Part shown: piece after piece, positions 3,055 to 54,000 of the stretch
Layout of the letters: every line of letters starts with the position of its first letter
Numbering within the stretch: position 1 is the stretch's first letter
NCBI RefSeq assembly: GCF_032191835.1
Contig: NC_083230.1
Location: 92,256,001 to 92,320,000, forward strand
Direction of reading: 5' to 3'
DNA length: 64,000 bases
Source: Heteronotia binoei
Taxonomy: Eukaryota
Made by a program: the position numbers and the translations under genes
Notes under the pieces: generated by a model
The model's database searches: none
What the model was told of the DNA's origin: nothing
The model's input: only the letters and a program-made list of their open reading frames with translations

Positions 3055-16374
<13,320 letters not shown>

Positions 16375-16813: not shown

Positions 16814-18540
16814 GTCTAGGAGAACCTTGCAGATGTCACGAGCTCGCACCTTGCAGGGTTGTGTCGTCTTTAATTTTGTTCCCCCCTCACTGCTAGTCCC
16901 TTTGAGTCGAGTGCTTCTGAACCTGTGCAGTTTCCCAAGGGGGCCTTGGAATGCCCCAAAGGAGGGCAGGACCGGATCTACATGTTTCTTGAGGGGGGGG
17001 GGGGCAAAATTAAAAAAATTGCACCCCCTTATGGGCCATCCTATCTTATGCTCCCATAGAATGCAATGGGCTCCATACCCAATTTGGCGCCCCCCCCTGT
17101 TGGTGCCCACGGAAAGCACAGCACCTTTAAGGCCTTTAAATCTTAAAGGTACTACTTGACTCGTGCTTCATTCCTACACGATTTAGCATTGAGTTCTGTA
17201 AGGCTAGTATATATATAATGTGAAGAAGAACTTTCTTTGGGGGCTTCTGAATTCTAGTGTTATGGGAGGGGAGAACTGTTCACTCCCTTGCTTATCCCCC
17301 CCCCCCAAAGAAAGCCTGAACTCTGGCTTTTCCCCCTTGAAGAAGGTGCTCTAATCCCTTCATTATTTTGGTTGCCTTTTTCTTCCCCCTTTGGATGAAT
17401 ATCCTTTTTGAAAAGGAGTGACAGAAAGGCTGCTGGGAGGCATTTGGTTGCATCCAGATGCTCATGGGAACAGTTATTTACTGTCATTCCTTTAGCATAG
17501 AAGGTCATTGTAATGCTGTTGTTATGTTGTCGCTATTTTCATCAGCCACAACACTAAAATTTCATTCTCAGGCAGTCACTGCCAGTTCAAATTCTTTCTG
17601 TATATACCCATCCCAAAACTAGATTTCTTGAATCTGTGTGTCTTAATTTTGGACTTCTTTATATTTGCTGTTTAAAGAGATCCTCTTAAAGCTCTTCACA
17701 AACCATCCTGAATAATTTGGTGCTATCTGCCAACTGCAAGGAAAGGAGTCTTTAGAGTACCGAGTCTGGGATGGGGTGGATAACACTTCATTTTCTTATC
17801 CAGGTAGTGTTGGAGGAAAGCAAGGAGCTTCATAACCATGTTTTCTTTCTCTGTTCTTCCTTTGTCCCTGTTTCTGTTGCCCATCTGAGATACACACAGG
17901 CAAGGTAGGCCAGAAGCACAGTAGAAGTAATGCACAGCGCACCAGCAGAGTAGCCAACACAGACTCTGGAGCAGAGCTATTCCAAAGGTATATCTTCACT
18001 TCAGAATGGTGAGCATGAAATGCATGTTCATCAGGGTATTATTTGTTGCAGAATGTTTGCCTTGGCAACACCATGAATTTCTTCTGAGCATCCTGGCTGT
18101 CTCTTGTTTGTGATCTAGTGTAGTGTAGTTTACTTGGTTCTGTCAGTATGTGTGAAACATACCGCTGCTCATCTCAGTTAAATTTTGATTTGAGAGTTAA
18201 TCTGTTTGGAAGGGATAATTTCATCCTGTGTATGTGTTAGATAGTAATACAGGAAAATGCAAGAAGATTGAGATAGATGCACCAAGGCTGGCCCTTCCTC
18301 CACTTGATGTTACATCCCTGTTGAAAAAAGCTTAATGCAGGGATCCCCATGGGTGCCATGGCGCCTGTGGACACTTTTCCTGGTGCCTGACAAATGCTTT
18401 AGAAAGTGGGTAGGGTTAAGTGGAGCTTTTGCCCGGCAGGGCTTCTAATTGGGTGCACAGACTAAAAGGCATCCTGTTAACCAGAGCTTCTGCCTGAAAT
18501 GTTGAATTCTGCCTGAAAATGTTGAATAATTCTACTATTA

Positions 18541-22789: not shown

Positions 22790-23001
22790 TATGAACATAT
22801 GAAGCTGCCTTATACTGAATCAGACCCTTGGTCCATGAAAGTCAGTATTGTCTTCTCAGACTGGCAGCGGCTCTCCAGGGTCTCAAGCTGAGGTTTTCCA
22901 CACCTATTTGCCTGGACCCTTTTTTGGAGATGCCAGGGATTGAACCCGGGACCTTCTGCTTCCCAAGCAGATGCTCTACCACTGAGCCACCATCCCTCCC
23001 C
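22790..23001 (-). mobile_element. tRNA-derived SINE with a CR1-like 3' tail
   Basis: Head gtggctcagtggtagagcatctgcttgggaagcagaaggtcccgggttcaatccctggc (A and B boxes); tail ...aaggcagcttcatatgttcat; second copy at 37019-37221. Confidence 0.8.
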
Positions 23002-24417: not shown

Positions 24418-27400
24418 GTAAGAAATCTTCAAGGCTAAAATGCTAATTTAAATAATTAGTTTCTCTGTTTGCAAGTGATACCCACAGAAGGGAACAGGCA
24501 GGTAAGGCTGTGGAGTACCCGCAGTCCCAGCCATAGATGAGTTTTAGATTTTGACAAGACAGGCCACCATAGGAAATAACTCAAAAACAGAATAACTGGT
24601 AACCATTGCTCCAGCATTGATTTGAAGCCTACTCAGGGCCCCACCTCCTTGGAGATCAGCCCTCAGTTAAAGGGACAACACTGTTTCTGAGATGCATTCT
24701 CTAGTAATGTTGTTCTGTGTCCTGTTTAAAATTATAGTCCTTTATCAAAGGAAATCTGTGTGTGTGGTTGGCTCTGTGGCTACACCCCCGAATGACCCAA
24801 GTCAAGAGTGTTTCATCTTCTCAAGGGCCTTGGTGTCTTTGGATTCTTCTGATACAGAAATGCCTCTCTGCTTCCTTGACCATGACACTGGTTAACCATT
24901 TTTTCTGTATGAACAAGGGCGTGGTATTGTATTCTGTCACCATATTGTATGCAGTGGGGTAGATTCTGTCTAGGACTAGAGGAGCAGCATGACCAGAAGT
25001 GAGCATTGCCTTTCTGCTCCTGTGGAGTAGCTGCCTTCTAAAGTGCTTTGGGCTCTACAAGGGAGGAAGGTGGCTAGCAAATTTATAATATAGTGGATTT
25101 GATGCATTGAAGAGGTGGAGTAGTAATGAACATCAGCTCTTTATTAGATACAGCATTAGGTGGGCTACACTTCAAGACTGAGGAACTGGGCCAATGGGGC
25201 CAACTGTATACAACTCAGGGTTCCCGCGCCAGCATGTTATTGGGTCATTCAAACCAGCAGGGGGCTTGTGATTGGTGCAGGGCAGCAGGGATTTGGATCC
25301 TGCTGCCCATTGTTCCCAAGTCCCCAAGCTCCGTTCTTCTGGCTCCAATGAGCCAGGCAGGAACACCATATATAGTCTTCACTTTGGTCAGCATATACAA
25401 CAAAATTATTTAAAAGAACAAATAAAGGGTTGGTGGACCATCAGAAAGGTGTGTGAGTCTGCATTGGGAGGAGGAAAATCCCAGGTGTTTTTTTTTCTGC
25501 AGGCAAGATGTGTCTTCAGCTAGCTGAATCCTTAATTAGGATCTACCTCAATGCTAATTATTAACAGGCTGTCCTTTCTCTTTCAGTTAATCAGATTCTA
25601 CTGTTCCTACTTGTTTTTACCATCTGTGTCATTCTTTATAACAAAGTTCACAAGATGCCATCTACCTTGCTAAAGAATGAACCAGGTACATGCCTATTGT
25701 TAGAATCTGTTTTTACTTTGACATTACCAAGATTGACCATTCCCATTCATAATACAAGATAAATTGGAATGTAGAGTCCAGAGCAAGCTGGCTTGCTTGG
25801 TTTCTCTAGCTTCTGCCCAATGCTGTTGGCTGCATACCCTTCTCTGCTACTAGCCAGCCAACAGTATGCCTGTTCTAGCTGCCCTATTCCCTCATGACAG
25901 CTACAGTGCCTCTGCATGCAAACAAGCACATGAGCGTGGGCCCAGTTCCGTAAGGAAATATGGCAGCCAAAACCAACATGGCAGCAGCCAGTAGGTATAT
26001 GGAAAGAAAGCTCATATTGAAATAAATGCTGTTAGTCTTTAAAGTGCCTTTGGGCTTTTTGTTTTGTGTTGACCAAGCAACAGACCTAGATGGTAGACTA
26101 GGAGAGAAGCCTGACATTAATTCGCAATGCCATTGACTTTCACCAAGACTTTCCTCCCAGCCTCTTTTACAGACTTCTGTAAAGGGCCCTTCTAGTGTAG
26201 AACTACAGCATTGTGTGTAGCAAAATAAAACAGCAGTCCAGGAGTGCTTAGAGATAAACAACATTTATTCCAGCATAAGTTTTCTTGAGTCAGAGCTCAT
26301 TTCACCAGACAGATAAACTGTACATCCATCTGACAGATGAAGGCTACAAACAATAGAAACAGTAGAGTGTGGGAGGACCGTTCCTTAACTGTTGATATAT
26401 CAGCCAAGTAGGATTAACATAAAGTCAGATCTAGAAAAGTGCAAAATTGAAACATGAAAAGCAGATCCAATTAGAAAATTGTATCATCTATATATCTAAT
26501 AGTGACATGTGACTCCATCTGCAGATATCTAAACCTGCACATCTGGGCCACGCTGACACTAAACAGATTTTCCTACAAGCTTGGGGGAGCTCCTGAGTTT
26601 GCAGAAAAACCTGAATTCTGAAAAAAATACACTGGAGATTTAAACAAACCTCCCCAATAGACTATTTCTGCCCGCGCACTGAAATACTCTTATTTTGTTT
26701 CTGCAGTGGTAAGCATTAAGAGCCACACTGGGATGCTTCTCAGGCCCTGGCCATGTCATCATAGGATGCCAGGAATCACTCCAGGCCTGGGCACAGCAGC
26801 AACAGATGCTGGGAGCTGCTGCAGATTCAGAGAGGCTCCCAGATGCTGCTGTTTCTTGGCTGAGCTCAGTGGTGGGTGGTGGGGTCTGGAGCCAGGCCAA
26901 ACCCAGCAATGGAGAGGGGGAGATGGAATCCTCCCACACATACACACAGTTGTATGTTTTAATAATGAAGTCAGTCAAATCTTTTTTTAAATTTTTTTAA
27001 AATATTTTAATTAAAAGTAAGTCAGTCAGATCTGAGGATACTTAGATCCAGCGACTGGAGCACTGAATGGACAAGACAGATATTTCTATCAGCCTGAATA
27101 CTGCCCCAGATAATTTGGCCAAGGGCTTAGAGGTTGCAGTTGGTTGGTTGGTTGAAGCAAAGCCAGCTGAAATTAAATCCACAGAAGATGGAGGTCCTGT
27201 GACTGAGCTGAGGAGATCCCAGGCTGAGATGCCAATTTCCAGCTCTTGATGGTGTGTCATTAACTTCAAGGCCACTTGTGAAGAGCTTGGGTGTGCTTCT
27301 AGATGCCTCCCTTTCCTTGGAGGCTCATAGAATCATAGAGTTGGAAGGGACTCAGATCACAAATGTTGCCAGACTGGCATTATTCCATCTATACAAGATA

Positions 27401-30400: not shown

Positions 30401-33400
30401 ATGAATAAGGGATCCCTTTGTTTCTCGGCACTTCTAGCATTTGTTCGAGTATTTGGGGTAAATTCTAGCCAATCTGTCTGGAGTGAGGTACCATCTGTAC
30501 ACCATTTTATAAAGATTCTCTTTAAGTTCTGCAGGTTTTATTAGTTTTAAATTCTGTTTCCATAATTTTTCCCATTCGATCAAATCAATGTTAAATCCGA
30601 AATCTTTTAACCAACGAATCCAACATTCTTTAACTGTCTCTCCTTGCATCTTTAATTGAAGTAGCCAATCATAGGCCTTAGAGATAATTTTCTGTTTGGT
30701 TGAAAGTAGCAAATCTAAGTCGTTGGGTTTATTCAGAAATCCCTTTTCCTTGTCCTTTTGAAATCTAGATTTTAGTTGGCATTGTACCCACCAGTCTAAT
30801 TTGGTGAGTTCTTCCTCAATCAAGGCATTATTGTCATCCAATAAAGTTCCGTAGTTATGCTGGTCTTTCCAGGCATACAAATTAGGGTGCGTCAGCTTCT
30901 ATTGGGGATAGCCACATTGGGGTATTATGGTAATGAACCTTGATTTCTTGCCAAATTCTAAAAAGAGATCTTCTTATTTCATGTCTTAAAAATAAACTTG
31001 AGTTAGTAGGGTTGCGGTACCACATGTAGTTGTGCCAGCCTTCCCCCAGACCCGCACCTTCCAACACTAGGAGTCTTTTATTTTCCAGGGAGCACCAGTC
31101 TCTCAGCCAAGCTATACAGCAAGCTTTGTAGTATAGACTCCATTCTGGGAGGGCAAGCCCCCCTCTTAATTTACTATCATACAACACCTTGGATTTTATT
31201 CTAGGTTTCTTGCCCTGCCAGATGAAGATCTTGACCATTTCATTAAGCTGTTGAAAGAATAATTTGGGAAGAATAATTGGAATCGTTTGAAAGAGAAATA
31301 AAATTATTGGAAGAACATTCATTTTAATTGTGGCAATTCTACCTAAAAGTGAGATTTGGAGGCCTTCCCATCTGGTTAGATCGTTTCGAATTTCCTTAAG
31401 TATTTTATCATAATTATCTCTGTACAAAGTTTTTAAGTCATTTGTCAAATAAATACCTAAATATTTCAATTTCTTTTCCTGCATAAAACCCGAGAGAGTT
31501 TCTAGTTGTTCAATCTGAGATTTATTCATATTCTTCGTTAAGATCTTAATTTTGGATACGTTCAATTTAAATCCTGAAATTTCACCATATTCTTTTAATC
31601 TTTGTTTCAAGAAGGTTATGGACGAAATCGGTTGTTCCAGGATAAATATTAAATCATCCGCGAAGGCTAATGTTTTAAATTCTTCGTTCTTCATTCTAAC
31701 TCCTTGAATTTTGGAGTCGTCTCTAATCTTTTGGATCAGAGGTTCTAGTGTTAGAATAAAAAGTAAAGGTGACAGGGGACAACCCTGTCTAGTACCTTGT
31801 TCTATATTAATAGGTTTAGTCATAGTTCCATTGAAGTTGATTCTTGCAGTTTGATTCGAATAAATTGCTGCTACCAAATTACGAAAATTGTCCCCACATC
31901 CAACAGCCGCAAGTGTCTTGCAAATCATATTCCAGTTAACCTTATCGAATGCTTTCTCTGCATCAACCATGATTCCCGCAAACTGTTTGTCAGGGTGTTC
32001 CTTGTAATATTCAATGATATTCAACAATAATCTCACATTCTGACTCATAAGACGTCCCGGAACAAAACCTGTTTGATCCCCGTGGATTATGCTGGAAATT
32101 ACCTTCTTGAGCCTATTCGCAAGAATTGTGGCAAAAATCTTGTAATCACTATTTAAGAGTGAGATAGGTCTATAATTTGGCTTAAAAATAATATTGGCAA
32201 ATATTTACGCTCCCAACGAAAACCAGGAGAGTTTTTACAAAGCATTACATCTCAAACTTAGAGAATTTGACTCCGAAAATTGTTGTATAATTGGAGATTT
32301 CAATGCAATATTTGATGCCAAAATGGACAAAAAATTTGAAGACCCCCCAAAAAGAAAAACGCGAAATCTATTACCCAAGTCTTTCTTGAAAATAGCTGAA
32401 GAACTAAATTTAGTGGATGTCTGGAGAACTAAGAACCCCCTTACTAAGGACTATACATATTATTCACATGTCCATAAATCCTGGTCTAGAATAGATATGT
32501 CTTGGGCATCCTTGAATTTGACATTATCTATAAATCAAACGGACATTTTACCTCAGACATACGCAGACCATAGCCCAATCCAATTGGTCTTGCAGGGAAA
32601 ATCAAGAAACCCCCGCTGGTCTCTTAATTTACAAATTTTAAAAGAGAGCAAATTTTTGGAAATGGCCAGGAAAGAAGTTAAAGAGTTCTTTTCTAACAAC
32701 CGGGAGGAAGACACCAAGATGCCTATTATATGGGACGCTTTTAAGGCCTTTTTCAGAGGAATAGCGATTAGATATTCCGCACAGAGGAAGAGAGAACAAA
32801 TGAAGTCATATAACGAATTGGTATCCAAACTGAAGATCTGGGAAAATCAGCAAAAGACCAAAAATTCAAAAGAGACGAAGGCCAAGATTATATCCACCCA
32901 ACATCAAATTAATCTTCTTTTGACAGAGGAGATTGAGCGGAAACTGAAGTGGGCAAAACAAAATTATTTCGAGAATGCAAATAAAGTGAGTAGATGGCTG
33001 GCTTATAAATTAAAGAAGGAAAAGCAGAAAAGGATCATTAAATCCTTGAAGAATAAAGAAAACGAAGAGGTTTTTCAGAGTTCCCAAATGAGTGATATTA
33101 TCCACAATTTTTACCAAAATCTTTATAAGATATAAGTCAAAAACAAGAGGACTATATAACAAATGTTAACCTGAACAAGATTACACATGAACAACAACAA
33201 GGGTTGGACAACCCTATTACAATTCATGAAATAGTAGAGGCGACCAAAAGTCAAAAACGAAACAAGACCCCAGGACCTGACGGTCTACCAATTGAATTTT
33301 TTAGAACATTCGAAGATATTTTACTGCTACCATTTAAAAAGGTGATTGAGAACATACAAACTACGGGGGAGCCCCCAGACTCTTGGAAAGAAGCTTTAAT

Positions 33401-36400
33401 TACCCTAATCCATAAAGAAGGAACTGATTCTTCGGAGATCAAAAATTATAGACCTATGGTTATCACCTTTAAAGCCCTATATGGCTTGGGACCTGTCTAC
33501 CTGAAGGACCGTCTCTCCCCGCATGTTCCCCAGAGAGTACTGAGGTCGGGATCACAAAACTTCCTTACTGTCCCTGGGCCGAAAGAAGCCCGCTTGAAAG
33601 CCACAAGAGAAAGGGCCTTCTCTGTTATGGCCCCTACATGGTGGAATCAGCTACCGGAAGAGGTGAGGGCCCTGCGGGACCTTGTTCAGTTCCGCAGGGC
33701 CTGTAAAACAACCCTCTTCCGGTTAGCCTACACCTAGCTTGAGAATTTTAATGCAACCTGCCAGATCTCTGTATATATTGGAATATTTATTAATTTTTAT
33801 GGTTTTATCTGTTTTATCTGTTTTAAAGTTATTCCCTTACATGTTTAAATATTGTTTAATTTATGTTGGATCTAATGCTGGAAGCCGCCCTGAGCCACTT
33901 GTGGGAAGGGCGGGATATAAATTCTAAATAAAAAAATAAAAATAAAAATAGAGCTTATATCCAGGAATGACTATATCCCAGAAATTTTCCACATTCCACT
34001 ATGTTTCTGAGATGCTTACTATATCCAAATTGTCACTGAACATCAAATAGTCCAGCTCCCCCATCTTGGCTCAGAGACTTCTAGCACTGGTATATAGATG
34101 TCTATAATGTGTTTCCCTCTCTAGTAACCTTGCCTCTTTCATCCCCTTGGCTGTCAGTCACCATCCTACCCTCACTCCCAAGTTCTATTACACTCCTGTG
34201 AATATTATCCTGAGTGTTTATGCAACAGCCAGTTTGGTGTAGTGGTTAAGTGCACAGACTCTTATCTGGGAGAATTGTGTTTGATTCCCCACTCCTCCAC
34301 TTGCAGCTGCTGGAATGGACTTGGGTCAGCCATAGCTCTCATAGAAGTTGTCCTTGAAAGGGCAGCTGCTGTAATAGCTCTCTTAGTCCCATCTACCTCA
34401 CAGGATGTCTGTTGTGGGGGGAGGAAGGTAAAGGAGATTGCGACCACTCTGAGATTTGCTAGCAGCCTGGTTCCTTTTTGGTTCAAGTGAAAACCCTCTC
34501 TTTTGTACACGTTTGGCTTGTCCCAGAAGGTTCCCCAGGGCCTAATAAATCTAAACCATCCAAGCACCACTTTCTCATCCATGAACTGACATCCCTGCTC
34601 TGTACCTGCCTAGCTGGCCCTGTGTATGGAATTGGCAGCACTTCTGAGAATGATATCTTTGAGGTTCTGTTCTTTAACTTTCTGCCTAGTAACCTATGCT
34701 TTTGCTCCAGAACCACACAACTACATTTCCTAATGGCATTGGTGCCAACAAGACTACTGGCTGCTCCCCAGTGCTATCTGTTATGCTATCTAGACAGTGC
34801 ATGATGTACACAGCCTTTGCACCAGGCAGGCAAGTAACCATGTGGTCAAAATGCCTGTCACAGACCCCCCTCTCTCTATTCCTAATAACTGAATCACCCA
34901 CTACCAGAAGCCTTTCACCCAGCCCTCCATGGATATCCTTAGTATGAGAGGATATCAGTCCATTGCTCAAGCAAGGGGTCCCTTCTAAGGGATCACATCC
35001 CTCCTCCTCAGACTGATGCCTTCCACTCAAGACTCTCGCTCTTCACTACAGCAGAAGAGCTGTCAGCACAGGTGTAGGACTGTTCTGTTAAGTCTCTGAG
35101 GGTCTCTTCCCCAAACTTCTGTCTATGCCTTGGTTTCTTCAGGTTGGCAACCATAGGCTCAAGGCAATGAGCTCATTGCAGCAGGCACACACCTATGATT
35201 ACCAAATCATTGGATAACTCCTCTGCTGGCTTTCTTCATAACTGGTTAGTGGTTTAAAAGTATCTAGAGCAGGGGTGGCCAACGGTAGCGCTCCAGATGT
35301 TTTTTGCCTACAACTCCCATCAGCCCCAGCCATTGGCCATGCTAGCTGGGGCTGATGGGAGTTGTAGGCAAAAAAATATCTGGAGAGCTACCGTTGGCCA
35401 CCCTTGATCTAGAGTAATGCAGGGTCCCCAGGCGTGATCTCCAGGCTAACAGCCGTAGACCAAGAGCCCTTTGACTCTCGCCCTTTGGCTTATGCCTCTC
35501 CTTAGGAGAAGCTTTAGTACAGAGGCCCACAGCCTCTGCCTCCCAACAGCAACATCAGAGGATGGGACCTGCAAAGAGGCAAACAGATCTTGTTCAATGA
35601 GTAGTAGACCAGACAAAAGACCCAAACAGGCCCGGACAAAAACACCGGTCTCCAGCAGGGTATAAGTACCCACTCACCTCAAATTCTGTTCTCTCACAAA
35701 ACAACCTCAGTTAATGTTCCCCAGTAGTTTAGCAGTTTAGAAAAGGCAACCAATAAAAGGTATCGTCCATTACATCTGTTAATTAGTTATCTATATCTGT
35801 ATAAAATTCTGATTTGTCCTGCTTGTCCTATTGCACTCTGTGCTTTCACAGATCAGACTTTATGTTAGTTCTACTTTGCCAAGCTGTCAACTGTTGGGGC
35901 TGAACAAAGCAGGAGTCAAGTTGCACCTTTAAAACCAACCAAGTTTTATTCAGAACGTAAGCTTTCGTGTGCTCTTAAGCACACTTCATCAGACGAGCAG
36001 AGCCATACATAGCTGGTAGGCAGTGGCCCAGAATGCAAAATGGTACAGATTTAAGAACCAATGACAGTGAAGTAAAATTATCTGGTAGGCAGTCGTCACG
36101 CACTTTCTAACATCTCCCTCCCACACTGCCTTACCATTGTTTGCAACTTTTAATGTAAATTCATAGGACTTATAGATCTGATGCCTCTGATCAAGTGAGT
36201 ACTGACTCAGGGAAGCTTATCCTCTGAAGTGCCACTGGATTCCTCCTGTGTTATTTTGCTGCTACTGATATGGCTGCCCATCTAGAATTGTAGTAACATG
36301 TGACCCCATTTTTTTTTTTTTTAAATAGTTGACTTGGAGAGCCCGGAAGAAATGGAAGAAGACATTCCTGTGGTGATATGTGCTGCAGCAGGAAGAATGG

Positions 36401-39400
36401 GAGCAGCATTTGCAGCAATCAGCAGCATTTACAGCAACTCTGATTCAAACATCTTGTTCTATATCGTTGGCCTCAAGAACAGCATCCTACATATCAGGTG
36501 GAATGATTTAAAGGAGCTATTTCAGTCCATGCTTGTCTGACTATTTAGAGGAAGGCTTAGAGAAGACAAAGGGTTGCCAGTCTCCAGGTGGGACCTGGAG
36601 ATCTCCAGACTACAGAGATCAGTTCTATTTTGGAGGATGGACTCCATGCTGAGCTCTCTTCTCTCTCCCAATCCAACTTCCCCCGGCTCCCCCCCCCCCC
36701 CCCGGCAAATCTTCAAGTATTTCCCACCTAGAGCTGGCAACCCTGAACTAACACAACTTTCCTGAATGTATGGCTGCTAGCTACTGTTCTTAGTAGGGGG
36801 GCGAGGCTGCAAAAATTAACAGTTAAGGGAGGTTTTAACCTTTTCGCTGCCTGTTTGTTATTTTTGCAATGTCCCATCCCTTACCAGATGCTTTCCCCTT
36901 GCATCTGAGCTTCTTCTGGTTCAGAGGAAAAGCATGTAAAAAACCCCCAAAACCACAGAGGCATTTGCAGGGAAAACATCTATCTTTAAAATATTTATCA
37001 TATTATTCTTTATTACACATGAACATACATGAAGCTAACTTATACTGAATCAGACCCCTGGTCCATCAAGGTTAGTACTGTCTACTCAAACTGTCAGCTC
37101 TTCTCCAGGGTCTCAGACTGAGGTCTTTCCATATCACATACTGCCTGGTAATTTTCATTGGGGATTGAACTTGGGACCTTCTGCATACCAAGCAGAGGCT
37201 CTTCCACTGAGCTAAAGCTCCTGTCAGAGGAGGATCAAGCGATACCAGCTATTTCATCATCCCTGTTTACCTGGGCTGTTTGCATGATGCTTTTGTTTTA
37301 TATTGTGTTCTTTTGCTGAGTTGCCTTGAAGATCTTGTTTTTGAAAGGCAAGTATATATGAGAGTGTGTATACATACACACACACACACAGAGATAGAAC
37401 AACACACTAATTGTTTGACATGTTCTTTGTCATGCTTCTGTTTCTTTTGCATATCAGAAAATGGATTGAAAATTCCAAACTGAAAGATATAAAGTTTAAA
37501 ATTGTGGAATTTAACCCCATGGTACTAAAAGGGAAACTCCGACCAGATGCAGCCCGCCCTGAGTTACTTCAACCTGTGAGTACCTAGCCAATATGAAAAA
37601 AAAAAGTGAAAACCAGTTTTCTTTGAAAAAGATGCATGTCCTTTTGCATAGCAGGCATCTCACAACCCTTGTGTTTATCCTGGAAGAAACATGATAACCC
37701 ACCCTTATCTCTACAATAAACCTATCAAAAGCTAGAGGAGATGAGTGGACACTTATTTTGTTCAAGGAGCTGAAGAAAAGAGGCCATAAAGATAGGCTAC
37801 AGCTTTTTCTGTCCCCTCCCCCTCCTAAACCTAACAACTGCCTAGAGATTTCAGTGATCATGAGTATGTGCAAAATACTTTCCTACTACTATTGAATGTC
37901 CTCGGATATAGGAATAGGGGGAACCTGGCTTCCAGGAAAGTTTGAATCCAAGCACCTTGTTTCCATAATTGAAACTCTAATATGAAAGGCATGCAAGGTA
38001 TCTGTTTCGTTAGAAATATTTATCCCAGTCACTGCTTGATATTGAATCAGACATTCCTACAAATCATCATTTAATGTTTCTGGATGACTTCTGCTTTATA
38101 GACTTTGTTGAAATCCTTCCCTTTTTATTCAACAGCTGAACTTTGTTCGATTTTACCTTCCTCTACTTATCCACGAACATGAGAAAGTGATATATCTTGA
38201 TGATGATGTAATTGTCCAAGGTAAGGGGCTTCTCTTCCCTCCATCATCTGAAACAGTGAAGACCCTAAAATGTATAGACTACATAGTTTTAAAAAAATTA
38301 GCTAAGATGTATTTGAAATTAATCAATATTAATTAATATAGATCACTTGTTACTTATTCTCAACAAAAGAAAAATTTCTGACAATGTTAGTTGTTTGGTA
38401 CATTCTAGGTGTTCATTGCATATGATCAGGGTAGAATTGTTATAAAAGTTACAAATGTATGTATAAGGTGTCCAGTTCTGTGCCAGCAGCTGTACAATTG
38501 ATAAAACACAAGTCTTTGTTAATGTCTTATGAATAAAAGTAGGAATAATAATAATACTTTTTATTTATATCCCGCCCTCCCCGCCAGGGCAGGCTCAGGG
38601 CGGCTCACAACATAAAAATACAATATACATCAACAGTTATACTTATAAAATCATCATTAAAACAATTTACAAGTTATATTAAAATTAGCATTATGGTGCT
38701 ATAAACATTAAATCTTCAGTAAGGTTCAGTAGCTAAAAACATATCCAGCGGCACTTTCTTAGCTTGTCATTAGTTGAAGGCTATTTTGAAGAGGTAGGTC
38801 TTACAGGCCCTGCAGAATTGATCTAAACATCGTAGGGCCTGCACCTCTTTTGGGAGTTGATTCCACAGCAGTGGAGCTGCAATGGAGAAGGCCCGATCCC
38901 GGGTTGTCTTCAATCTGGCCTCCCTTGGCCCAGGGATATTCAGCTGGTTTTTTCCAGCTGACCTCAGCGCTCTCTGGGGCTCATATGGGGAGAGACGGTC
39001 CCTCAGGTAGACAGGTCCTCGGCCATATAGGGCTTTAAAGGTAATGACCAGCACTTTGTAACGAACTCGGTATACCACTGGCAGCCAGTGCAGTCCACGC
39101 AGCCCCGGCTGTATGTGCTCCCATCTTGGGAGCCCCAGCAGCAGCCTAGCTGCCGCGTTCTGCACCAGCTGCAGTCGCCGAGTTCGGCACAAGGGCAGCC
39201 CCATGTAGAGGGCGTTGCAGTAATCCAGTCTCGAGGTGACCATAGCATGGATCACCGTTGCTAGGTTCCGGCGCTCCAGGAAGGGGGCCAGCTGCTTCGC
39301 CCGTTGAAGATGAAAAAACGCAGACTTGGCAGTGGCCGCTATCTGTGCCTCCATTGATAATGAAGGCTCCAGAAGAACCCCCAAGCTCTTGACCCTATGG

Positions 39401-42400
39401 GCTGCTTTCAGCAGCACACCGTCAAAGACCGGCAAGGGGATTTCCCTTCCCAGGGCACCGCGGCCCAAGCAAAGGACCTCTGTCTTCGTTGAATTCAACT
39501 TCAGCCAGCTCAGCCTGAGCCAACCTGCCACGGCCTGCAGTGCTAGGTCCAGGTTTTCTGGGACGCAGTCAGGTCGGCCGTCCATTAGTAGATAGAGCTG
39601 GGTGTCATCTGCATATTGATGGCACCCAAGCCCAAACCTCCGAGCAATCTGGGCAAGGGGGCGCATGTAGATGTTGAACAACATCAGAGAGAGAACTGCC
39701 CCTTGTGGCACCCCACACACTAATGGGTGCCTCCGGGACAGCTCTCCCCCAATTGCCACCCTTTGTCCCCGTCCATCAAGGAAAGAGGAAAGCCACTGTA
39801 AGGCCAACCCCCTAATCCCTGCGTTGGCGATCCGGCGGGCCAGTAGCCGATGATCGACCGTGTCGAACGCAGCCGACAGGTCCAACAACATCAGCACCGC
39901 TACGCCGCCTCGATCCAGATGCCGCTGGAGGTCATCCACCAAGGCGACCAGCACTGTCTCCGTCCCATGGCCTGGACGAAAGCCGGACTGGTGGGAGTCT
40001 TAGGCAGAAGTGTCATCCAAAAAACTCTGCAACTGTAGCGCCACTGCTCTCTCAATAACCTTACCTAAAAATGGTAAGTTCGAGACCGGTCGGTAGTTCG
40101 CCAATTCAGCCGGATCTGCTGAACTCTTTTTTAAGAGAGGGCAGACCATAGCCTCTTTCAAGGATGTTGGAAATTGCCCTTCCAAGAGGGATCTATTTAT
40201 GATATCCCGTACAGGATATCTAAGCTCCCTCTGGCAAGATTTAATTAGCCAGGAGGGGCATGGGTCAAGATCGCAAGTTGTAGGGCGTACAGTTGCGAGA
40301 ATTCCGTCGACTTCCCCTAGGCTAAGCGCGTCGAAGTGATCCAAGGTAACATCAGAAGACAGGCACGGAGCCCCGGGTTCTTGTACTGCATCCAATGTGA
40401 CAGGAAGGTCCTGGCGGAGCGAGGAGATTTTATCTGCAAAAATTTTTGCAAAAGCCTCACAGCCTATTTCCAATTCTCTCATGTTTGGTCTGCCTTGAGG
40501 CAGAGTAGTCAAATTCTCAATTATCTTAAATAATTGTGCCGGGCGCAAATTTGCAGATGCAATCCTAGCCGCAAAGTAATCCTTCTTTGCGGCTTTGACT
40601 GCCATCTCATAAGACTTCATAAACGTTCTATAGGATGTTCTCGTCGCTTCATCACGAGTATGCCGCCACCGCCTTTCGAGTCGTCTGAGTCCCTGTTTCA
40701 ATTGGTGTAGCTCCAAGGTGTACCATGGAGCCAGCCTATTTCGGGGGCGCAGAGGACGCCGGGGTGCGATCTCGTTGATGGTCCTGGATAGCCTGTCATG
40801 CCAGGTCTCTACCAGGTCATCAACAAAATCGCTAGGGGGCCAGGGGTCCCGCAGAGCCCTTTGGAACCGCTCAGGGTCCATCAGACTCCGTGGGCGAGCC
40901 CAAATAGGCTTGCTGCCCATACAGGGTTGAGGCAGCGCACCCACACGAGCCTTAAGGGCTAGGTGGTCTGACCATGGCACCGCTTCTGCTGCGATACTGT
41001 CCACCAGAATCCCGGACGCAAAGATCAAGTCTAACATGTGCCCGGCCTGATGCGTGGGGGTGGTAACAAATTGGGAGAGTCCTAGTGTCGCCATGGAAGA
41101 CACTAGGTCCAGCGCCTGATTGGAGGCCATGTCATCCACATGGACGTTGAAATCGCCCAAGACCATAAGCCTTGGGAACTCCAACGCCCAGCTTGCCACG
41201 GCCTCCATCAGGGCTGGTAAGGCGCTGGCTGGTGCGTTAGGCGGACGGTACACCAGCCAAATCGCCAACCCCTCCCCCACTTCCCACGTCAGACCGGCAC
41301 ATTCCAGGCCATCGATCGTTGGGGCCGGGAGAGCCCTGAAGGAGTAACCCTCCCATATGAATAGCGCCACCCCTCCCCCCGCCCGGTTGTCCGTGATTGG
41401 TGAAAGACCGAGTAACCTGGGGGCGCCATCTGGGAGAGAGCCACCGTCTCTCCATCCCGCACCCAGGTCTCGGTCACGCAAGCCAGGTCCATATCCTGCT
41501 TAAGCAGGTATTCCCTAAGGATTGAGGTCTTATTATTTATGGACCTGGCATTACATAACACCAATGACGGAGACGGGCTTTCCCTCTTTGTTACCATTAG
41601 AAACTCATGGCATCAGAGATTGCAATTCTTGGACACAGGCTATTGGAAAGTATGGAATTGTGGTTGAAGGACTGGCAGATATTCTCTGAGAAACACGATA
41701 CATTAGTTTTTCCTCAATCAGGGCTTATATCATGACTACAGCTAGAGTTGGGAAGGCATTTTTCCTTTTGTCTGGATTCTGAGCCCCTTCCAGGAGACTT
41801 ATAACTTGACTTGCATATCTGAACCAAGTGGGTTGTTTCAGTAAGTTTCTTTCAAATGCCAGGAACTTCTTGTACAAGGCCTTGCTCTTGATATCTGCAT
41901 ATGGCACTGTCATGATCTCTGTCACCTTGTGGGGCAAGACTAGCCACTATCCTGCCCTTCCTTTTTACTGTCACTGCCATTAGCTCGGGTAAAACCCAGC
42001 CCCTTTCTCTCTATCAGGCCAGCTTCACAGGAGCGTATTACTGTAGCATGTCAAGGAATCGAAGACAGGTGGGTAAGGAATTGTGCATACTCTCTCAAAT
42101 TAAAACAACTTTAGTTCTACAAGGCATGAAGTCATGGCACTACATGGATAGATTTAGGTGCACTGAACAAAATAAACAAAAGGACAGCTACTAACTAGGT
42201 ACTTACAATTCCAGGTCTATCTGGTCTTTGTTTGTTGCAGGATGCCCCCATCCCTGGTGCATCTGCAATCCTCTTTAGTGTCATTCCCTTCTGTCATGTC
42301 AACCTTCATGACAAAACTCAGGAGAGACATCTCTCTTTGTGCACTCCAAACCTCCAGGGCACCCCGCTCAAAGGAACAGCTACCCTTTTCAGACCCGCCT

Positions 42401-45400
42401 GCGTGTGCTTCATGGCCTTCAGACTATCTGGGTGCCAGGTCCTGGGGCTCAAACCCACAAGACTTGAACTTTCCAAACAAGAGGTGTTAACACATCAAAG
42501 GACGAGCATGTTTCCCTCTTAGTTGGGAAAGCATGCTGTCTACCCAGGAAGAGCTCTTTCGTCCCTTCTTCATAGCCACAGAGACATCAAGGTCCCTTTC
42601 TATCACCCTGTCAGCCTCTCTTGCCCTGCTGCCTCTCAATACATCCCAGGGCATACTGCAGGAAAAGGATCAAATACAATTTATAAAAAGCACATTTCTA
42701 GTTCCTAAATAAGCACATAGCAGACCAGTTGTTCTCTTCAAAGAGACATCCCTTCCTGTAAGAGAGAGAAGGAGAAATACCTCTTCTACATTGGTGCTAG
42801 CTTCCAGCTTGTTTTGTAAGCACGGCAAAATCTTGTGAGTACAGCTGACATAGTGAAAAGTGCAGACCAATGAGACCCTTGAACAAGCTTCTATTTTTTA
42901 AAAGGTGACATTCAAGAACTGTATGACACCAAGCTAGCTCCTGGGCACGCTGCAGCTTTTTCAGATGACTGTGATTTGCCATCGACTCATGAAATGGTCA
43001 GAAGTGTAGGAATGCAGGTAAGAAATCTTTGCAACATAAAAATGTATTCCTAGAGTACAGTCCTGCTTAATTCTTCTGGAGTTTGGGTGTGTTTATACAC
43101 AGTATCTTTAGGGAATAAGGCAGTATTGGAACTTACATAGGTCTTCTGATGCTCATCATACGATGCAAATTGAAACAAATTAAAAGGATCTGAGCATATG
43201 CATAGTGATGCATTCAAGATTGAAAAGGGAGGGAAGCAAGTAGGCCAGGAATTGTCCCTTGGCTTGTAGAATTAATTGCTGTTATTAATTTACCCACATG
43301 GCTTTATATGATAGCAGAGGTCCAAGAGAATTTCAAGTTGTATAGCCTGTCTCCCTCTTCATTTCTTATAATGTTGAAGACAGTGTTATACAGTGGCAAA
43401 AGAGTCAGATGGCAACTATGAGATCTGGATTCCAATTTCTTCTTTGAGATAAAGCTCACTGGATGACCTTGGGCCAGTCACTCAGTACAACCTACTTCAC
43501 AGGGTTGCTGTAAGATAAAATGGGAGGGAGGAGAGGGTCATGTATGCCCCAAGAGCTCCTTGGAGGATCGATAGGATGAAAATGTAACAAATAGTGACTG
43601 GATTCTAGAAGCCAACAGTCCCTAATCTGCTTGCTCCTCCTTCTCAGCTCCCCCCACTGGTGGATTTTGAATGCATTCCTGAGCAAGCACATGTTTTTTC
43701 TTTCAGTCTAACACAAGAATGACTGTTACTAGGCCAAGTTATAAACAAACTATGAAATGGCTGGGTGTTTGTAGAGTCATTTTGCACTTCATTTGTTTCT
43801 TTTTTAAAGAACACCTATATGGGATTCCTAGACTACCGGAAACAAATAATTCGTGATCTTGGCATTAGCCCCAGCACCTGCTCCTTTAACCCTGGTGTCT
43901 TTGTCGCTAACATGACGGAATGGAAGCACCAACGAATTACAAAGCAGTTAGAGAAATGGATGCAAAAAAATGCTGAGTATGTACAAAGTGCTCTCTCTCC
44001 CCTGCAGGATTCTAAAGTTCATACAGTTGGTATTATTTGATTGAGATGCAGACTTCTAAGGAATTTATCATGGAAGAACACCAGGATAGGTAGGCATAGG
44101 TCCTTAATAATTTCTCTTGACATTTTGTTTTAACAGAATGTGGATTAAAAGAGCCAAGGAGCTATTTAACTTTTCCCACATGTCATTTCCCCTAACTGGT
44201 TATGCCTAACTGGGAAAAATCTGTGGGATACAAGCAGTTTCATAAAAGGAACTTGGGACAGCAATTTCCAGCCCAAAAAAACATGAAGGAAAAATAATGA
44301 AATCTCTGCTACTGTCCTTCCTTTGAATTAGTTCCTGCAGTTGTGCTGTTAAAACAAAAAAAGGTTTGGGAAAATAATTGTAGACCTACCTTGACATGAA
44401 ATTCTACACTCAGATTATTTTTGGCATACTTCCTTTGGCACTTTAGATTCCTTTGCTGTACTTGCAGAGTCTCCACTACTTAAATACCAGACAAGCATAT
44501 ACAACATAAATGCTGTTTGGGGAGACTTTCTTGTGTGTTAGCTCATCATCATACCCTACTGGGCATTTGAACAAAGAAATTGAGTGCATACAGCGGATGT
44601 CAGTCATCTTGTAGATTTCAGCCCTAGTAGTGTTATAGCACCCTAACCTCATCAGATCTTGACTGCTAAGCAGGGTTAGCCCTGGTTAGTACTTGGATGG
44701 GAGATTGCCAGGGTAGTCCATGGTTGCTATGTAGAGGCAGGTGATGGCAAACCACTTCTGATCCTGTTTTGCCTTGAAAACCCTATGGGGTTGGCATAAG
44801 TTGGCTGTGACTTGACTGCACTTTCCAATGCCACTCATGTTGCTGTTCAATTTTTTTGAGTGCTACTCTGATCCTTTCTGCCTGCCCCCCTCGTTTACAT
44901 GAGTGGAAATGTGCTATGCTTTCTGGGTTACCATACAGTTAAGTAATAGACAATTTTTCCCTCCTAAAAACAACAAAACAGAATTTTCTTTTTAAAATCT
45001 TTTCAGAGAAAACCTTTACAGCAGCACTCTTGCAGGAGGTGTGGCCACTCCCCCAATGCTCATTGTATTCCATGGAAAATATTCACCCATTACTCCTCTG
45101 TGGCATATTCGCCATCTAGGTAAGTGTTTGACTACAAAAAAAAAGAGATCCTCAGCCTCAGGATGACCTTATTATACTGAAGGTTTCCTGCATACAAGAA
45201 ATAGCACATACTTCCAAGTTACATGCTGAATCAGAAGTTTCCAACCTTGGTGAATTAAACTAATGTTTAATAGCTATGTACACATGCAACATTTGAGAGG
45301 TGAGAAAGCATATATACTTTTTTTTGTTAGGGTTTGTAAAATCTTTCGGGCTCAAGTGCCGTGTTCTACTGGAGAAAGTTTTTCTTCCAGACGTTTCGTT

Positions 45401-51048: not shown

Positions 51049-54000
51049 CTGCATAAAACAAATCAAAATGTGTTACTAATATAGCAGACATTGTGTCAAA
51101 AAGAAAAGACATTACCAGGGCACAATTTTGGATCATTTTAAATTCATATACCTGCTGAACTACAACACAGCTTCTGGAGATGCTGTGGAGACTTATATTC
51201 CATTCTGAATTTTTCAGTCTTTATCTTTAAAGAGTAAAGTTTTAAGCTTTTTACTTGTTAAGATGGGGAAGGGGGAAAATATGAAAGCAGTATTCTGTCC
51301 AACTGCACTACACAGTAGCAAAATCTGTTCCCAGTTTTGTTGCCAATTAATACAAAGGCACTAGGATGATCAAGAAGCATCTGAAACAGTTACATTTTAT
51401 TAAACTTAGCTTTGCTACTAAATAACATTCTCAAACTGAGTTTTCCCATCTCACACTAGCTTCCAAAGCGCTCTGTCCACACACTGTAATGTCCCCTGAA
51501 CAGCCTTGCTAGTTACAATTATTTCATTTAAAAGCACAAGTTGTAATGAAGGGAAACAAAAACCTGGATCCTGCCTAAGAATTTCAAGAACAGAAGGTTG
51601 TGTATGTGTGTGAATATGGCAGCCACTCCCCACCCCCAGCTAATCCTGGGGGGGGACCACCATCTCCAGAAGCAGCATTTCTTGAGACATTCTGAGCTGC
51701 AGTGGGAGATGGGGAACTCTCAGTTCAGTTCTCAGACAGAAATTCTTCTACCTGTGGAAATTTTAGGCTGCATCCAAACTACTAACACTACTGAGAAGGC
51801 TGAATTGTACTGAGTTACATAAATCTGCACATTTTTCTCTCAGAATTCTGAGAAACTTAATTTGTAAGCTGATGCAAAAAAAAAGAAAAAGAAAAAAAAA
51901 GGACCAAGTTGAAAAGCACCTAAACTGCTTTATAATTTTGCACTGTTCTAAACATATTGCTTCAGTCGTCTAAACAAAATAAGTAATAAAATTTATTTGT
52001 ATTGCATTTCTATTTTTTTTCTAGAACAGCTAGATTTGAGTCCAGGAGCACCTTAGAGACCAACCACATTTTCAGGGCATAGGCTTTTGAAAATCAAACT
52101 CCCATTGTCAAATACCTGCTTAAGGTATCTGATGAAGGTAGCTTTGACTTTCAAATGAAACAAATGGTTTCATTTTAAAACCAGGAAAATCTTGTTCGTT
52201 TCTAAGGTGCGACTGGAGTCAAACCTAATTATTTTTTTTTAAGAAACTGAATTAATTTTTAAAGAAATCCATAATCTACCTGTTCCATTTGATGGAAAGT
52301 TGCATGTTTCACTCTCATTGGCTGGTTTCTCACTGTAAGCTCCTCCAAAAGCGGCTTCATAACCTGGATCATATTTTTCTTCTTTTACAGCCATTTTCTT
52401 AGCATCCTCTGGACAATGAAAGCCAACAAAGTTAATTCACAGGCAGTAATTCGGGTCCGTACAATTTTATGACAACTATGCCTCAAATATGCAACAACAC
52501 CCACACAGTTCATAAGTTCATGGCACATGGTTTATTTTACACATGCATTCAGCAAACTGAATTTAGTTGAACTTGCTAAGTTATACCTTGTGCAAGCTGC
52601 AAGTCAAAGGTGTATTGCACTTCTTGGACCTCTGTGTTTGACAAAATGCCTTTCAGCTGATCCCTTAGATCTTTCAGCTTTATATAATAATGAACTTTAT
52701 CTTGTGCACGAGGAAACTGAGCACATCTTGCACTGGATGATGGCATAACATAGCAAAGCTGTGCAAAACAAACAACAAAGGAGCAAGCAGCATCAGATCA
52801 AAAATCACCAAGTTGCTACAACAGTTATTAAAACACTATTATTGACTTGAATGTATTTCAAACTCTTCTCTCTTCAATCTAAGGCAGTGAAATTTTAAAA
52901 ACTGGACAAGTAATGCTGGCTTTCAATGAATATACAAGGCATTCTCAAATTAGGTATCCTAATCTTAATTAGATATCCTTCCAAAAATCAGATCTATACA
53001 TCTAAATTCACTAATCTCTGATTTTTTGCACTTGGAGAAGATTGAAGTATCAACTGATTAAGATCCTATGCCACTTTTATATTTTTAACCAAGGCAAGCA
53101 CTTACCGTTTCTGTGTCTGGAACTTTATGTGGCTGTAGTCCGAATTCCAGCTTTTTAACCTTTATTCCAAAAACCTCTTTACTAAAAATGTCATAAATAC
53201 CTACAGCAAAATTAAAGATAACCCATTGTTAGACAAAATACAAGACCAGTAGAATACAAAATTCAAGACCATACTACAGAAGCTGCTTAAGTAAAAATCT
53301 TACATTTTCCATTAAAAACTGCTATTTTAGGTTGATACTTCTGTAATTTCTGCACCAGAATTCGTCCTCCTTCCCGAAACTCTTTGCTAAAAGGAAAAAG
53401 AACTAAAAATAAAAATTGGACCACAGTTACCAGTGTTTGCTACATGATATTTTGAATTTTATCCTACCTGGAAAGATCCTTGCTACCTGGTGTTGTCCTT
53501 TCCACCATATTTGTAAATCCAATACCATATTTATGCGGTAAGGTATGATCATCCATATGGTTCAACTGTTGGTCACTAAGCCCAGACATAAACAGACACT
53601 TCCCTGTGAAGTCAGAAAATGCATGTTTCTTATGATATCAAGATCTACTTTCAACAAAGTATTTATTTCTGAACATATGATAAGCATAATGTTAAGCATG
53701 CATGCATATTAATACTATAGGCACTTTTGCATCTTGCATAGTCAGGATTTTTTTTTTTAAATCACTGATTAGATCAGTAGTCTTCAATCCATGGATGAAG
53801 AAGCCACACCAGCTAGCTTGTGAGCCCTTACAGAGCAGCCATTTTGTCTTCTGCTGCTTTTTGGAAAGACCTAATTCTAGTGCAAATGTGTGGAGAGCAA
53901 GGGTGCCATACATTCTGACTCCTTGCAGGCTAGCATAGCAGCAGGGTAGTGAGGAGAGGTCATTCAGTCACGGGGAGGATTCCCACAAGGCTCTGATCCT

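What the first reader, a model, noticed from the sequence alone, without database searches (positions are those of the whole stretch)
35956..35995. Structurally intact minimal hammerhead ribozyme in a GLT8D2 intron (antisense)
Seen: the minus strand reads cgt-CUGAUGA-A-gugugcu(uaag)agcacac-GAAA-GC-UU|acg. All catalytic-core nucleotides are present, stem II is a perfect 7 bp, stem I is 3 bp, and the predicted cleavage is after CUU (between 35959 and 35958). Established: Penelope-like retroelement pLTRs carry minimal type-I hammerheads whose stem III is replaced by a short palindrome (here AGCU) and which cleave as dimers; an extra A after A9 is a known tolerated core variant. Inference: this copy may still be catalytically competent, so any antisense transcript through this intron could self-cleave or act in trans with other copies.
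Basis: partly seen in the sequence, partly recalled or inferred. Interest (0 to 1): 0.75.

Follow-up and report, generated by a model that had tools for sequence, protein, structure and literature searches.

The report
Penelope-type retrotransposon hammerhead ribozyme relic
The 40-base hammerhead-ribozyme motif is really there, but it is the inherited end piece of a very common lizard "jumping gene" (Penelope-like element) that landed recently in this intron, and nothing suggests that it cuts RNA here, so it is ordinary.

Summary
The minus strand 35995-35956 reads cgu-CUGAUGA-A-GUGUGCU(uaag)AGCACAC-GAAA-GC-UU|acg: a complete hammerhead core, a perfect 7-bp helix II, a 3-bp helix I and an AGCU palindrome in place of helix III.

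It is not a chance match. It lies in a 204-bp insertion (35899-36102). Contigs that look orthologous from two related species stop matching at 36103, and one joins 35898 to 36103. The insertion belongs to a repeat family with at least five further decayed copies in this window and very high summed contig depth in related species.

Its features match the published minimal hammerhead of metazoan Penelope-like elements (PLEs): unpaired base between A9 and G10.1, G10.1-C11.1, long helix II, palindromic 15.2-16.2. The family copies also show PLE insertion habits: 5' truncation, an optional ~40-nt AC-rich tail and a fold-back copy. No RT/GIY-YIG ORF is in the window, so the PLE link is indirect.

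The claim of catalytic competence is not supported. The copy is single and antisense to the host GT8-family (GLT8D2-like) gene. Helix I adds only -0.5 kcal/mol, and the catalytic dimer is not favoured. Published PLE minimal hammerheads are inactive as monomers or need the element's protein. The core looks intact because the insertion is young (3 CpGs kept).

This scan has already reported the same kind many times in this genome.

The parts
35956..35995 (-). Minimal type-I hammerhead motif: helix I 5' strand 35995-35993, CUGAUGA 35992-35986, unpaired A 35985, helix II 35984-35978/35973-35967 with loop 35977-35974, GAAA 35966-35963, palindrome AGCU 35963-35960, U17 35959, helix I 3' strand 35958-35956
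   Evidence: Read directly. It is the only descriptor hit in the window.
35899..36102 (-). 204-bp insertion of a 5'-truncated PLE-type element (or a PLE-derived non-autonomous unit). It holds the hammerhead plus about 57 nt of 3' sequence, including AAUAAA at 35947-35942, and about 105 nt of upstream element sequence. It ends before the family's optional tail.
   Evidence: In one search a contig of run X5 joins 35898 to 36103 (skips 204). The X2 and X5 contigs that look orthologous stop matching at 36103. X1 contigs cover 35901-35994/7 and 35995-36085/97 as repeated units.
35901..35994 (-). Core repeat unit shared with other family copies, running from the hammerhead to ...GCTTTGTTC
   Evidence: It is 91% identical to 5207-5298. 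Summed contig depth is 8e3-1.3e5 here against 10-33 on the neighbouring exon in three related-species runs.
5160..5301 (-). Older family copy that starts exactly at GTCTGATGA. Its hammerhead is decayed (GAAA to AAAA, helix II broken, all three CpGs lost). It carries the ~40-nt AC-rich tail that the candidate lacks.
   Evidence: (E 3e-47)
36186..36289 (+). Old, decayed, inverted copy of the same family (CUGAUcA...GgAAGCUUA, internal deletion, tail present), 84 nt from the insertion. It is also present in the related-species contig that lacks the insertion.
   Evidence: (E 0.003), alignment, inverted repeats, record 23 (36103-36264)
52031..52227 (.). Old fold-back (head-to-head) pair of family copies in an AT-rich site. 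Each arm has a decayed hammerhead, and the axis lies about 10 nt upstream of CUGAUGA.
   Evidence: 43-nt arms, 81% complementary
36329..36498 (+). Host-gene exon (glycosyltransferase family 8, GLT8D2-like). It defines the intron and shows that the motif is antisense.
   Evidence: records 16, 24 and 32 align 36329-36566 in three species

Best explanation
The motif is the minimal hammerhead carried near the 3' end of an abundant squamate Penelope-like retroelement family, or of a non-autonomous derivative of one. A 5'-truncated 204-bp copy (35899-36102, minus strand) was inserted by target-primed reverse transcription into this intron, in antisense orientation, probably after the split from at least two related species. 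It ends at the family's short 3' end, without the optional ~40-nt AC-rich tail. The core is intact because the copy is young and inherited it from its master element, not because the host keeps it. In the source element the hammerhead presumably acts, weakly or with the element's protein, on multimeric element transcripts. At this locus it is a single, unpaired copy and is almost certainly inert. Shown here: the sequence, family membership, insertion boundaries and energetics. Inferred: the PLE parentage (from hallmarks and architecture) and the inactivity (from the literature and thermodynamics).
For: Motif.

Family: there is a 91% identical copy at 5207-5298. nhmmer finds further copies at 52037-52220, 17141-17173, 1956-2021, 36186-36289 and 26006-26087. 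Summed contig depth over 35884-35971 is hundreds to thousands of times that of the adjacent exon in three related-species runs, and the only frequent alternative letter listed there is 35933 A>G.

Insertion: the 35898 to 36103 joint, and contigs that look orthologous ending at 36103.

PLE hallmarks published in PMC4209133 are all present. [quoted passage not shown]

PLE insertion habits described in PMC8557442 and PMC11167929 are seen among the window's copies. These are the hammerhead near the 3' end, heavy 5' truncation, an optional 30-40-bp tail, inverted adjacent copies and an AC-rich RT start region about 100 nt after helix II.

Youth: 3 CpGs are kept in the candidate and 0 in the 5207 copy.

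Inertness: energetics, plus the monomer inactivity and protein dependence.
Against: No RT/GIY-YIG ORF is linked to this family in the window, and I could not search the genome, so the PLE parentage rests on hallmarks, architecture and unverified earlier scan notes. The family's sequence is not alignable by eye with the published Anolis Poseidon_Ac consensus, whose hammerhead is CUGAgGA...GAAACGUC. Helix I (3 bp) is shorter than the published 4-5 bp. The empty-site contig has up to about 86 letters unaccounted for ('between: not known'). Inactivity was not measured.
Confidence: 0.82

Rival explanations
1. It is a monomer of a non-LTR 'retrozyme', a short non-autonomous PLE-derived hammerhead repeat mobilised in trans, rather than a truncated autonomous PLE.
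For: No frame stays open from helix II onward, with stops in all three frames within about 40 nt, unlike Poseidon_Ac, whose ORF begins at helix II. Units are short, and several structural breakpoints fall at the 5' edge of the hammerhead. The preprint 10.64898/2026.07.22.740005 reports reptile retrozyme consensus lengths averaging 176 bp, dispersed monomers, about 43% of copies in introns, and origin from pLTRs.
Against: No tandem array occurs here or elsewhere in the window. The optional tail, truncation and fold-back are equally expected for autonomous PLE ends. The two readings differ only in the parent element, not in what this copy is or does.
Confidence: 0.3
2. One reading: this copy is a working ribozyme that cleaves antisense transcripts of the intron, alone, as a dimer, or in trans with other copies.
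For: All core nucleotides are intact, helix II is perfect, and the NUH rule is met with U16.1-U17. Sequences of this family are abundant in one RNA library of a related organism, X1, although contigs cannot show strand or ends and DNA may be present in that library.
Against: There is no same-strand partner nearby. The nearest neighbour is inverted and decayed. Helix I contributes -0.5 kcal/mol. The catalytic dimer is at -20.1 kcal/mol against -21.2 to -23.4 for two monomers, and the non-catalytic helix II strand-swap duplex is at -30.6. PLE min-HHR monomers show no detectable cleavage and dimers only weak cleavage at non-physiological Mg2+. The Anolis PLE hammerhead is silent without its protein, and no RNA-seq ends were found at its site. 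From general knowledge, not tested here, NUU triplets are among the poorer hammerhead substrates.
Confidence: 0.06
3. It is a domesticated intronic hammerhead of the amniote HH9/HH10 kind (as in RECK, CTCL, DTNB), kept for host mRNA biogenesis.
For: It is intronic and lies close to an exon (about 335 nt).
Against: It is antisense to the gene. It appears to be absent from the orthologous site in related species. It gives no Rfam HH9, HH10 or Hammerhead_1 signal even at E<=10 on 71 nt. It belongs to a dispersed repeat family.
Confidence: 0.01
4. It is a chance match, or a C/D-box snoRNA-like element (UGAUGA ... CUGA).
For: There are weak Rfam alignments to SNORD74 (12.7 bits against a gathering score of 41) and other C/D models. 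The bare CTGATGA...GAAA pattern is no more frequent than chance (3 observed against 2.07 expected).
Against: The full descriptor is expected about 0.005 times per window, and it gave no hit with a 7-bp helix II in 400 random windows. The motif is part of a repeat family whose other copies carry decayed versions of the same motif. The snoRNA scores are far below threshold, and the spacing between the boxes is too short.
Confidence: 0.01

Closest known systems
Minimal hammerheads (min-HHR) of metazoan Penelope-like elements (Cervera & De la Pena 2014, PMC4209133)
   Same: It is type I. [quoted passage not shown] It is mostly found as single dispersed motifs from truncated elements. The kind has been reported in reptiles.
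   Different: Helix I is 3 bp rather than 4-5. The cleavage triplet is CUU. A link of this family to a PLE ORF was not shown here.
Poseidon_Ac (PAc) of Anolis carolinensis and its protein-assisted hammerhead (Frangieh et al. 2024, PMC11167929)
   Same: It comes from a squamate host. The hammerhead lies about 100 nt upstream of an AC-rich region where insertions end. A 30-40-nt tail is optional, and targets are AT-rich.
   Different: It is a different sequence family. PAc has CUGAgGA and GAAACGUC (ACGU palindrome, C17), and its ORF begins at helix II. The candidate family has stops in all frames there. The PAc type is represented in this window by the fold-back at 45331-45483, not by the candidate.
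Non-LTR retrozymes of animals (tandem type-I hammerhead repeats giving circRNAs; preprint 10.64898/2026.07.22.740005)
   Same: They are short PLE-pLTR-related units with a type-I hammerhead that needs a dimer, and monomers are dispersed, including in introns.
   Different: There is no tandem arrangement at this locus or in the window, and there is no evidence of circular RNA.
Amniote intronic hammerheads HH9/HH10 (Rfam RF02275/RF02277)
   Same: They are type-I hammerheads in vertebrate introns, thought to derive from retroelements.
   Different: Those are in sense orientation, conserved across amniotes, have loop-loop tertiary contacts, and are detected by Rfam. This one is antisense, lineage-specific, minimal and undetected by Rfam.

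Membership tests
Hammerhead ribozyme (core definition) | Conserved core C3-U4-G5-A6-N7-G8-A9, G12-A13-A14, A15.1-U16.1, and H17 at the cleavage site | tested here: met
   CUGAUGA, GAAA, A15.1 with U16.1 (35963/35960), U17 (35959).
Hammerhead ribozyme (core definition) | Self-cleavage activity at H17 | not testable with these tools
   This needs an in vitro transcription assay or end-mapping. The read tools offered only contigs of other species.
PLE minimal hammerhead (Cervera & De la Pena 2014) | Unpaired nucleotide between 9 and 10.1, G10.1-C11.1, long helix II (7-8 bp), palindromic 15.2-16.2 in place of helix III | tested here: met
   against the criteria quoted.
PLE minimal hammerhead (Cervera & De la Pena 2014) | Helix I of 4-5 bp | tested here: not met
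   Only CGU/ACG (3 bp) pairs, and the next positions are U-U and C-U mismatches. Helix I is worth -0.5 kcal/mol. Contigs of run X1 carry extra letters just upstream of the motif that this copy lacks.
Penelope-like element insertion | Hammerhead near the 3' end of 5'-truncated copies, an optional 30-40-bp tail, and inverted or fold-back adjacent copies | tested here: met
   The candidate ends 57 nt after the cut site without a tail. The copies at 5160-5301, 1956-2021 and 36186-36289 carry a ~40-nt AC-rich tail. There is a fold-back at 52031-52227.
Penelope-like element insertion | The family is joined to an ORF encoding a TERT-like RT and a GIY-YIG endonuclease | not testable with these tools
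   There is no GIY-YIG motif in any frame of the window. No eukaryotic genome collection is available, and the metagenome and viral pattern scans gave only one chance bacterial hit.
Non-LTR retrozyme | Head-to-tail tandem repeats, each unit carrying a hammerhead | tested here: not met
   The candidate is a single unit, and no direct repeat of it occurs nearby.
Rfam hammerhead families (Hammerhead_1, _3, _II, HH9, HH10) | Covariance-model score at or above the gathering threshold | tested here: not met
   There was no hammerhead hit at gathering, nor at E<=10 on 601 nt or on 71 nt. That is expected for a motif without helix III.

The most novel reading that the evidence does not exclude
The 5' edge of the hammerhead may be a preferred structural boundary for this family's cDNAs. 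One copy starts exactly at GUCUGAUGA (5298). A fold-back axis lies about 10 nt upstream of CUGAUGA (52109-52128). The candidate differs from related-species contigs by an indel at the same edge (35995-35998), and those contigs' matches also break at 35994-35997. This could mean that the folded hammerhead, or a pLTR transcription start just upstream of it, defines short 'HHR-to-RT-start' mini-insertions. That would give the motif a role in shaping insertions rather than in cleavage.
Probability: 0.12. Interest if true: 0.4.

Novelty: already known. Interest (0 to 1): 0.1.

Why it matters
It matters little in itself. Minimal hammerheads at the ends of Penelope-like elements, including in reptiles, were described in 2014, and the Anolis element was studied biochemically in 2024. 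This scan has already followed up many equivalent copies in this genome. The case is useful as a clean example of two points. An intact catalytic core in a repeat copy reflects the age of the insertion (empty site in relatives, CpGs kept) rather than selection. Rfam models miss this class of motif, so annotators need a dedicated descriptor.

Tried and rejected
Rfam scans at gathering and at E<=10 gave no hammerhead family, only C/D-box-like noise.

The bare pattern CTGATGA-N-GAAA is not enriched, so a structured descriptor was needed.

A scan of metagenome contigs and viral contigs with a 20-nt family anchor outside the hammerhead gave one unrelated contig with dense ORFs (L001), which I discarded. 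These collections cannot supply family copies.

The look-up of sequencing runs found no run holding the locus, only small shares from other organisms. Read laying therefore gave contigs only, so nothing can be said about the strand, ends or level of any RNA.

The sharp fall in depth beyond 35972 in the three runs of unrecorded library type (X2, X5, X7) is most simply an alignment-clipping effect at the indel-rich loop II, with only about 20 alignable bases left. I do not read it as evidence that most copies lack the 5' half.

A search for a GIY-YIG motif in the six frames of the window found none. Pfam on the single exon peptides gave nothing useful.

The apparent compensatory change in helix I between the two copies (CGU/ACG against UGU/ACA) is two CpG decays and is not counted as covariation.

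No clear target-site duplication was found at 35898/35899 and 36102/36103.

The findings look-up by sequence and a word search for a full-length element gave nothing. The supplement of PMC4209133 is not held.

The exon peptides were searched apart.

Full report
**Observation.** On the minus strand, 35995 to 35956 reads cgu-CUGAUGA-A-GUGUGCU-uaag-AGCACAC-GAAA-GC-UU-acg.
- Every invariant hammerhead position is present.
- Helix II is a perfect 7-bp Watson-Crick stem with G10.1-C11.1.
- One A is unpaired between A9 and G10.1.
- A15.1-G-C-U16.1 forms the palindrome AGCU in place of helix III.
- U17 is at 35959, so the predicted cut lies between 35959 and 35958.
- Helix I is CGU/ACG, 3 bp.

**Is it more than chance?** The bare pattern CTGATGA-N(8-38)-GAAA is not enriched in the window (3 found, 2.07 expected). 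A structured descriptor required helix I of at least 3 bp, CUGAUGA, 0-1 extra base, helix II of at least 4 bp, GAAA, a palindromic 15.1-16.1 segment and H17. It hits only this site in the window. It hit twice in 400 Markov-simulated 64-kb windows, and never with a helix II of 7 bp or more. On a whole vertebrate genome a few chance hits would still be expected, so the stronger argument is homology, set out next.

**The motif is part of a repeat.**
- A self-comparison shows that 35902-35994 is 91% identical to 5207-5298.
- A profile of these two copies finds further decayed copies at 52037-52089/52128-52220 (a fold-back pair), 17141-17173, 1956-2021, 36186-36289 and 26006-26087.
- All copies share a conserved block, AAGGTGCNACTGGACTC, downstream of the hammerhead.
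- Only the candidate keeps an intact hammerhead. The 5207 copy has GAAA changed to AAAA and a broken helix II. The 36186 copy has CUGAUcA and GgAA.
- Contigs of four public runs from other organisms were laid on 35400-36700 at 80% likeness. Over 35884-35971 they pile up to summed depths of 8,000-130,000, against 10-33 on the neighbouring exon. The tool warns that this is not a copy number, but it shows a very abundant family in related species.
- In that stretch the only frequent alternative letter listed is 35933 A>G. The 3' half of the hammerhead in this copy therefore equals the majority sequence.
- The 5' half is covered mainly in run X1, whose contigs run to 35994/35997.

**Extent and age of the insertion.**
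- In one search, contigs of runs X2 and X5 that look orthologous, at single-copy depth, match 36103-36209 and 36103-36264 and stop exactly at 36103.
- One X5 contig joins 35898 to 36103, skipping 204 bases.
- X1 contigs show that 35995-36085/97 is also repeated and is joined to the hammerhead unit in that organism, with extra letters at the junction.
- The element in the window is therefore a 204-bp insertion, 35899-36102, on the minus strand. It was probably acquired after the split from the organisms of X2 and X5. Up to about 86 letters of the X5 contig are unaccounted for, so the empty site is probable rather than certain.
- The candidate keeps three CpGs in the unit, and the 5207 copy has none. 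This fits a young insertion.

**What family is it?** Cervera and De la Pena 2014 (PMC4209133) define the metazoan PLE minimal hammerhead by four features that were not part of their search descriptor.
- A nucleotide lies between positions 9 and 10.1.
- The G10.1-C11.1 pair is present.
- Helix II is long (7-8 bp) and helix I is short (4-5 bp).
- Positions 15.2-16.2 are palindromic, so that two copies can build helix III together.

All are met here, except that helix I has only 3 bp. They report such motifs in reptiles, mostly as single dispersed copies from truncated elements.

Craig et al. 2021 (PMC8557442) and Frangieh et al. 2024 (PMC11167929) describe the PLE insertion habits.
- Copies are heavily 5'-truncated, and the hammerhead lies near the 3' end.
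- A 30-40-bp tail is optional. It arises from two reverse-transcription start sites in an AC-rich region about 110 nt after helix II.
- Inverted 5'-truncated copies often lie adjacent, and targets are AT-rich.

The window's copies show each of these.
- The candidate ends 57 nt after the cut site, at ...GCTTTGTTC.
- The copies at 5160-5301, 1956-2021 and 36186-36289 run on for about 40 nt through an AC-rich tail. Loose ends show the same continuation in other species.
- 52031-52227 is a fold-back in T-rich DNA.

The published Anolis Poseidon_Ac consensus has a different hammerhead (CUGAgGA...GAAACGUC). That type matches the other fold-back in this window, at 45331-45483, not the candidate. The candidate therefore belongs to another PLE lineage or to a non-autonomous derivative. 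No frame stays open from helix II onward, and no GIY-YIG motif exists in the window. I could not search the genome, and the public collections on hand gave only a chance bacterial hit. The link to a PLE ORF therefore remains inferred. Earlier notes of this scan say that the genome is a lizard or gecko with a very abundant PLE carrying such motifs. I used these only as leads.

**Does it work here?**
- The host exon (36329-36498; GT8-like) is on the + strand. The hammerhead could therefore exist only in an antisense transcript, for which I have no evidence.
- There is no second same-strand copy nearby. The neighbour at 36186-36289 is inverted and decayed.
- Nearest-neighbour energies put the monomer with helices I and II at -10.6 kcal/mol, of which helix I gives -0.5.
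- The catalytic double-hammerhead dimer (intermolecular helices I and III) is at -20.1 kcal/mol. That is no better than two monomers (-21.2 to -23.4) and far worse than a non-catalytic helix II strand-swap duplex (-30.6).
- The 60-nt fold is not more stable than shuffled sequence (z = -0.76).
- In published tests a PLE min-HHR monomer showed no detectable cleavage, and dimers were weak and needed mostly non-physiological Mg2+.
- The Anolis element's hammerhead cleaved only with its protein. Its mutants did not affect insertion in vitro, and no RNA-seq reads end at its cut site.

The inference of competence is thus unsupported, though not disproved.

**Rivals.**
- A retrozyme monomer remains possible, but it differs only in the parent element.
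- A domesticated HH9/HH10-type intronic ribozyme is excluded by orientation, apparent lineage-specific presence and the silence of Rfam.
- Chance and a C/D-box snoRNA (12.7 bits against 41) are excluded.

**Verdict.** This is a real motif, correctly read and correctly assigned to the PLE kind. It is ordinary, already described in the literature, and already reported repeatedly by this scan on other pieces of this genome. The one observation that might deserve a genome-wide look is the recurrence of structural breakpoints at the 5' edge of the hammerhead (5298; 52109-52128; 35995-35998; contig ends at 35994-35997).

Noticed in passing
window 45331-45483: A near-perfect hairpin whose arms read ...GAGAACGAAA(C/T)GTCTGGAAG...AGCCCGAAAGA...ACAAACC. 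By eye this matches the start of the published Anolis Poseidon_Ac consensus (GGGCGAAACGTCAGGAGAG...AGCCCGAAAGAC...ACAACAACCC). It is therefore a Poseidon-type PLE fold-back joined at hammerhead helix II, from a different family than the candidate.
   Followed up: partly
window 5298; 52109-52128; 35995-35998: Three independent structural breakpoints of the family fall within about 10 nt of the 5' edge of the hammerhead: a 5' truncation, a fold-back axis, and an indel relative to related-species contigs. Contig matches in run X1 also break at 35994-35997. This may be an RT stop or template switch, or a transcription start. The sample is too small to judge.
   Followed up: partly
window 35942-35947 (minus strand): An AAUAAA polyadenylation-type hexamer lies 11 nt downstream of the predicted cut site. 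It is conserved in the 5207 copy and sits in the deepest-covered bin of the family. It could explain a bias against sense-oriented intronic copies. This was not tested.
   Followed up: no
window 36570-36606: Just downstream of the exon's donor site lies a stretch (...GGTTGCCAGTCTCCAGGTGGGACCTGGAGATCTCCAGAC...) with summed contig depth of 1.6e4-1.2e5 in three related-species runs. The contigs run on with CAGAATTACAACTGATCTCCAGAC. It is another very abundant squamate repeat, not identified.
   Followed up: no
window 35263-35413: A nested inverted repeat: 43-nt arms at 91% complementarity enclosing perfect 31-nt arms. It looks like a palindromic MITE-like element, and it is moderately repeated in related species (bins 35400-35487).
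   Followed up: no
window 22925-22996 and 37159-37221 (minus strand): tRNA-like sequences pass the Rfam tRNA threshold (55.1 and 30.7 bits). They are probably heads of tRNA-derived SINEs rather than tRNA genes. The second lacks part of the T arm.
   Followed up: no
window 30882-33737 and 38770-41481: Long LINE-type reverse-transcriptase and endonuclease ORFs lie on opposite strands and flank the exon block. They are non-LTR retrotransposon copies unrelated to the hammerhead family.
   Followed up: no
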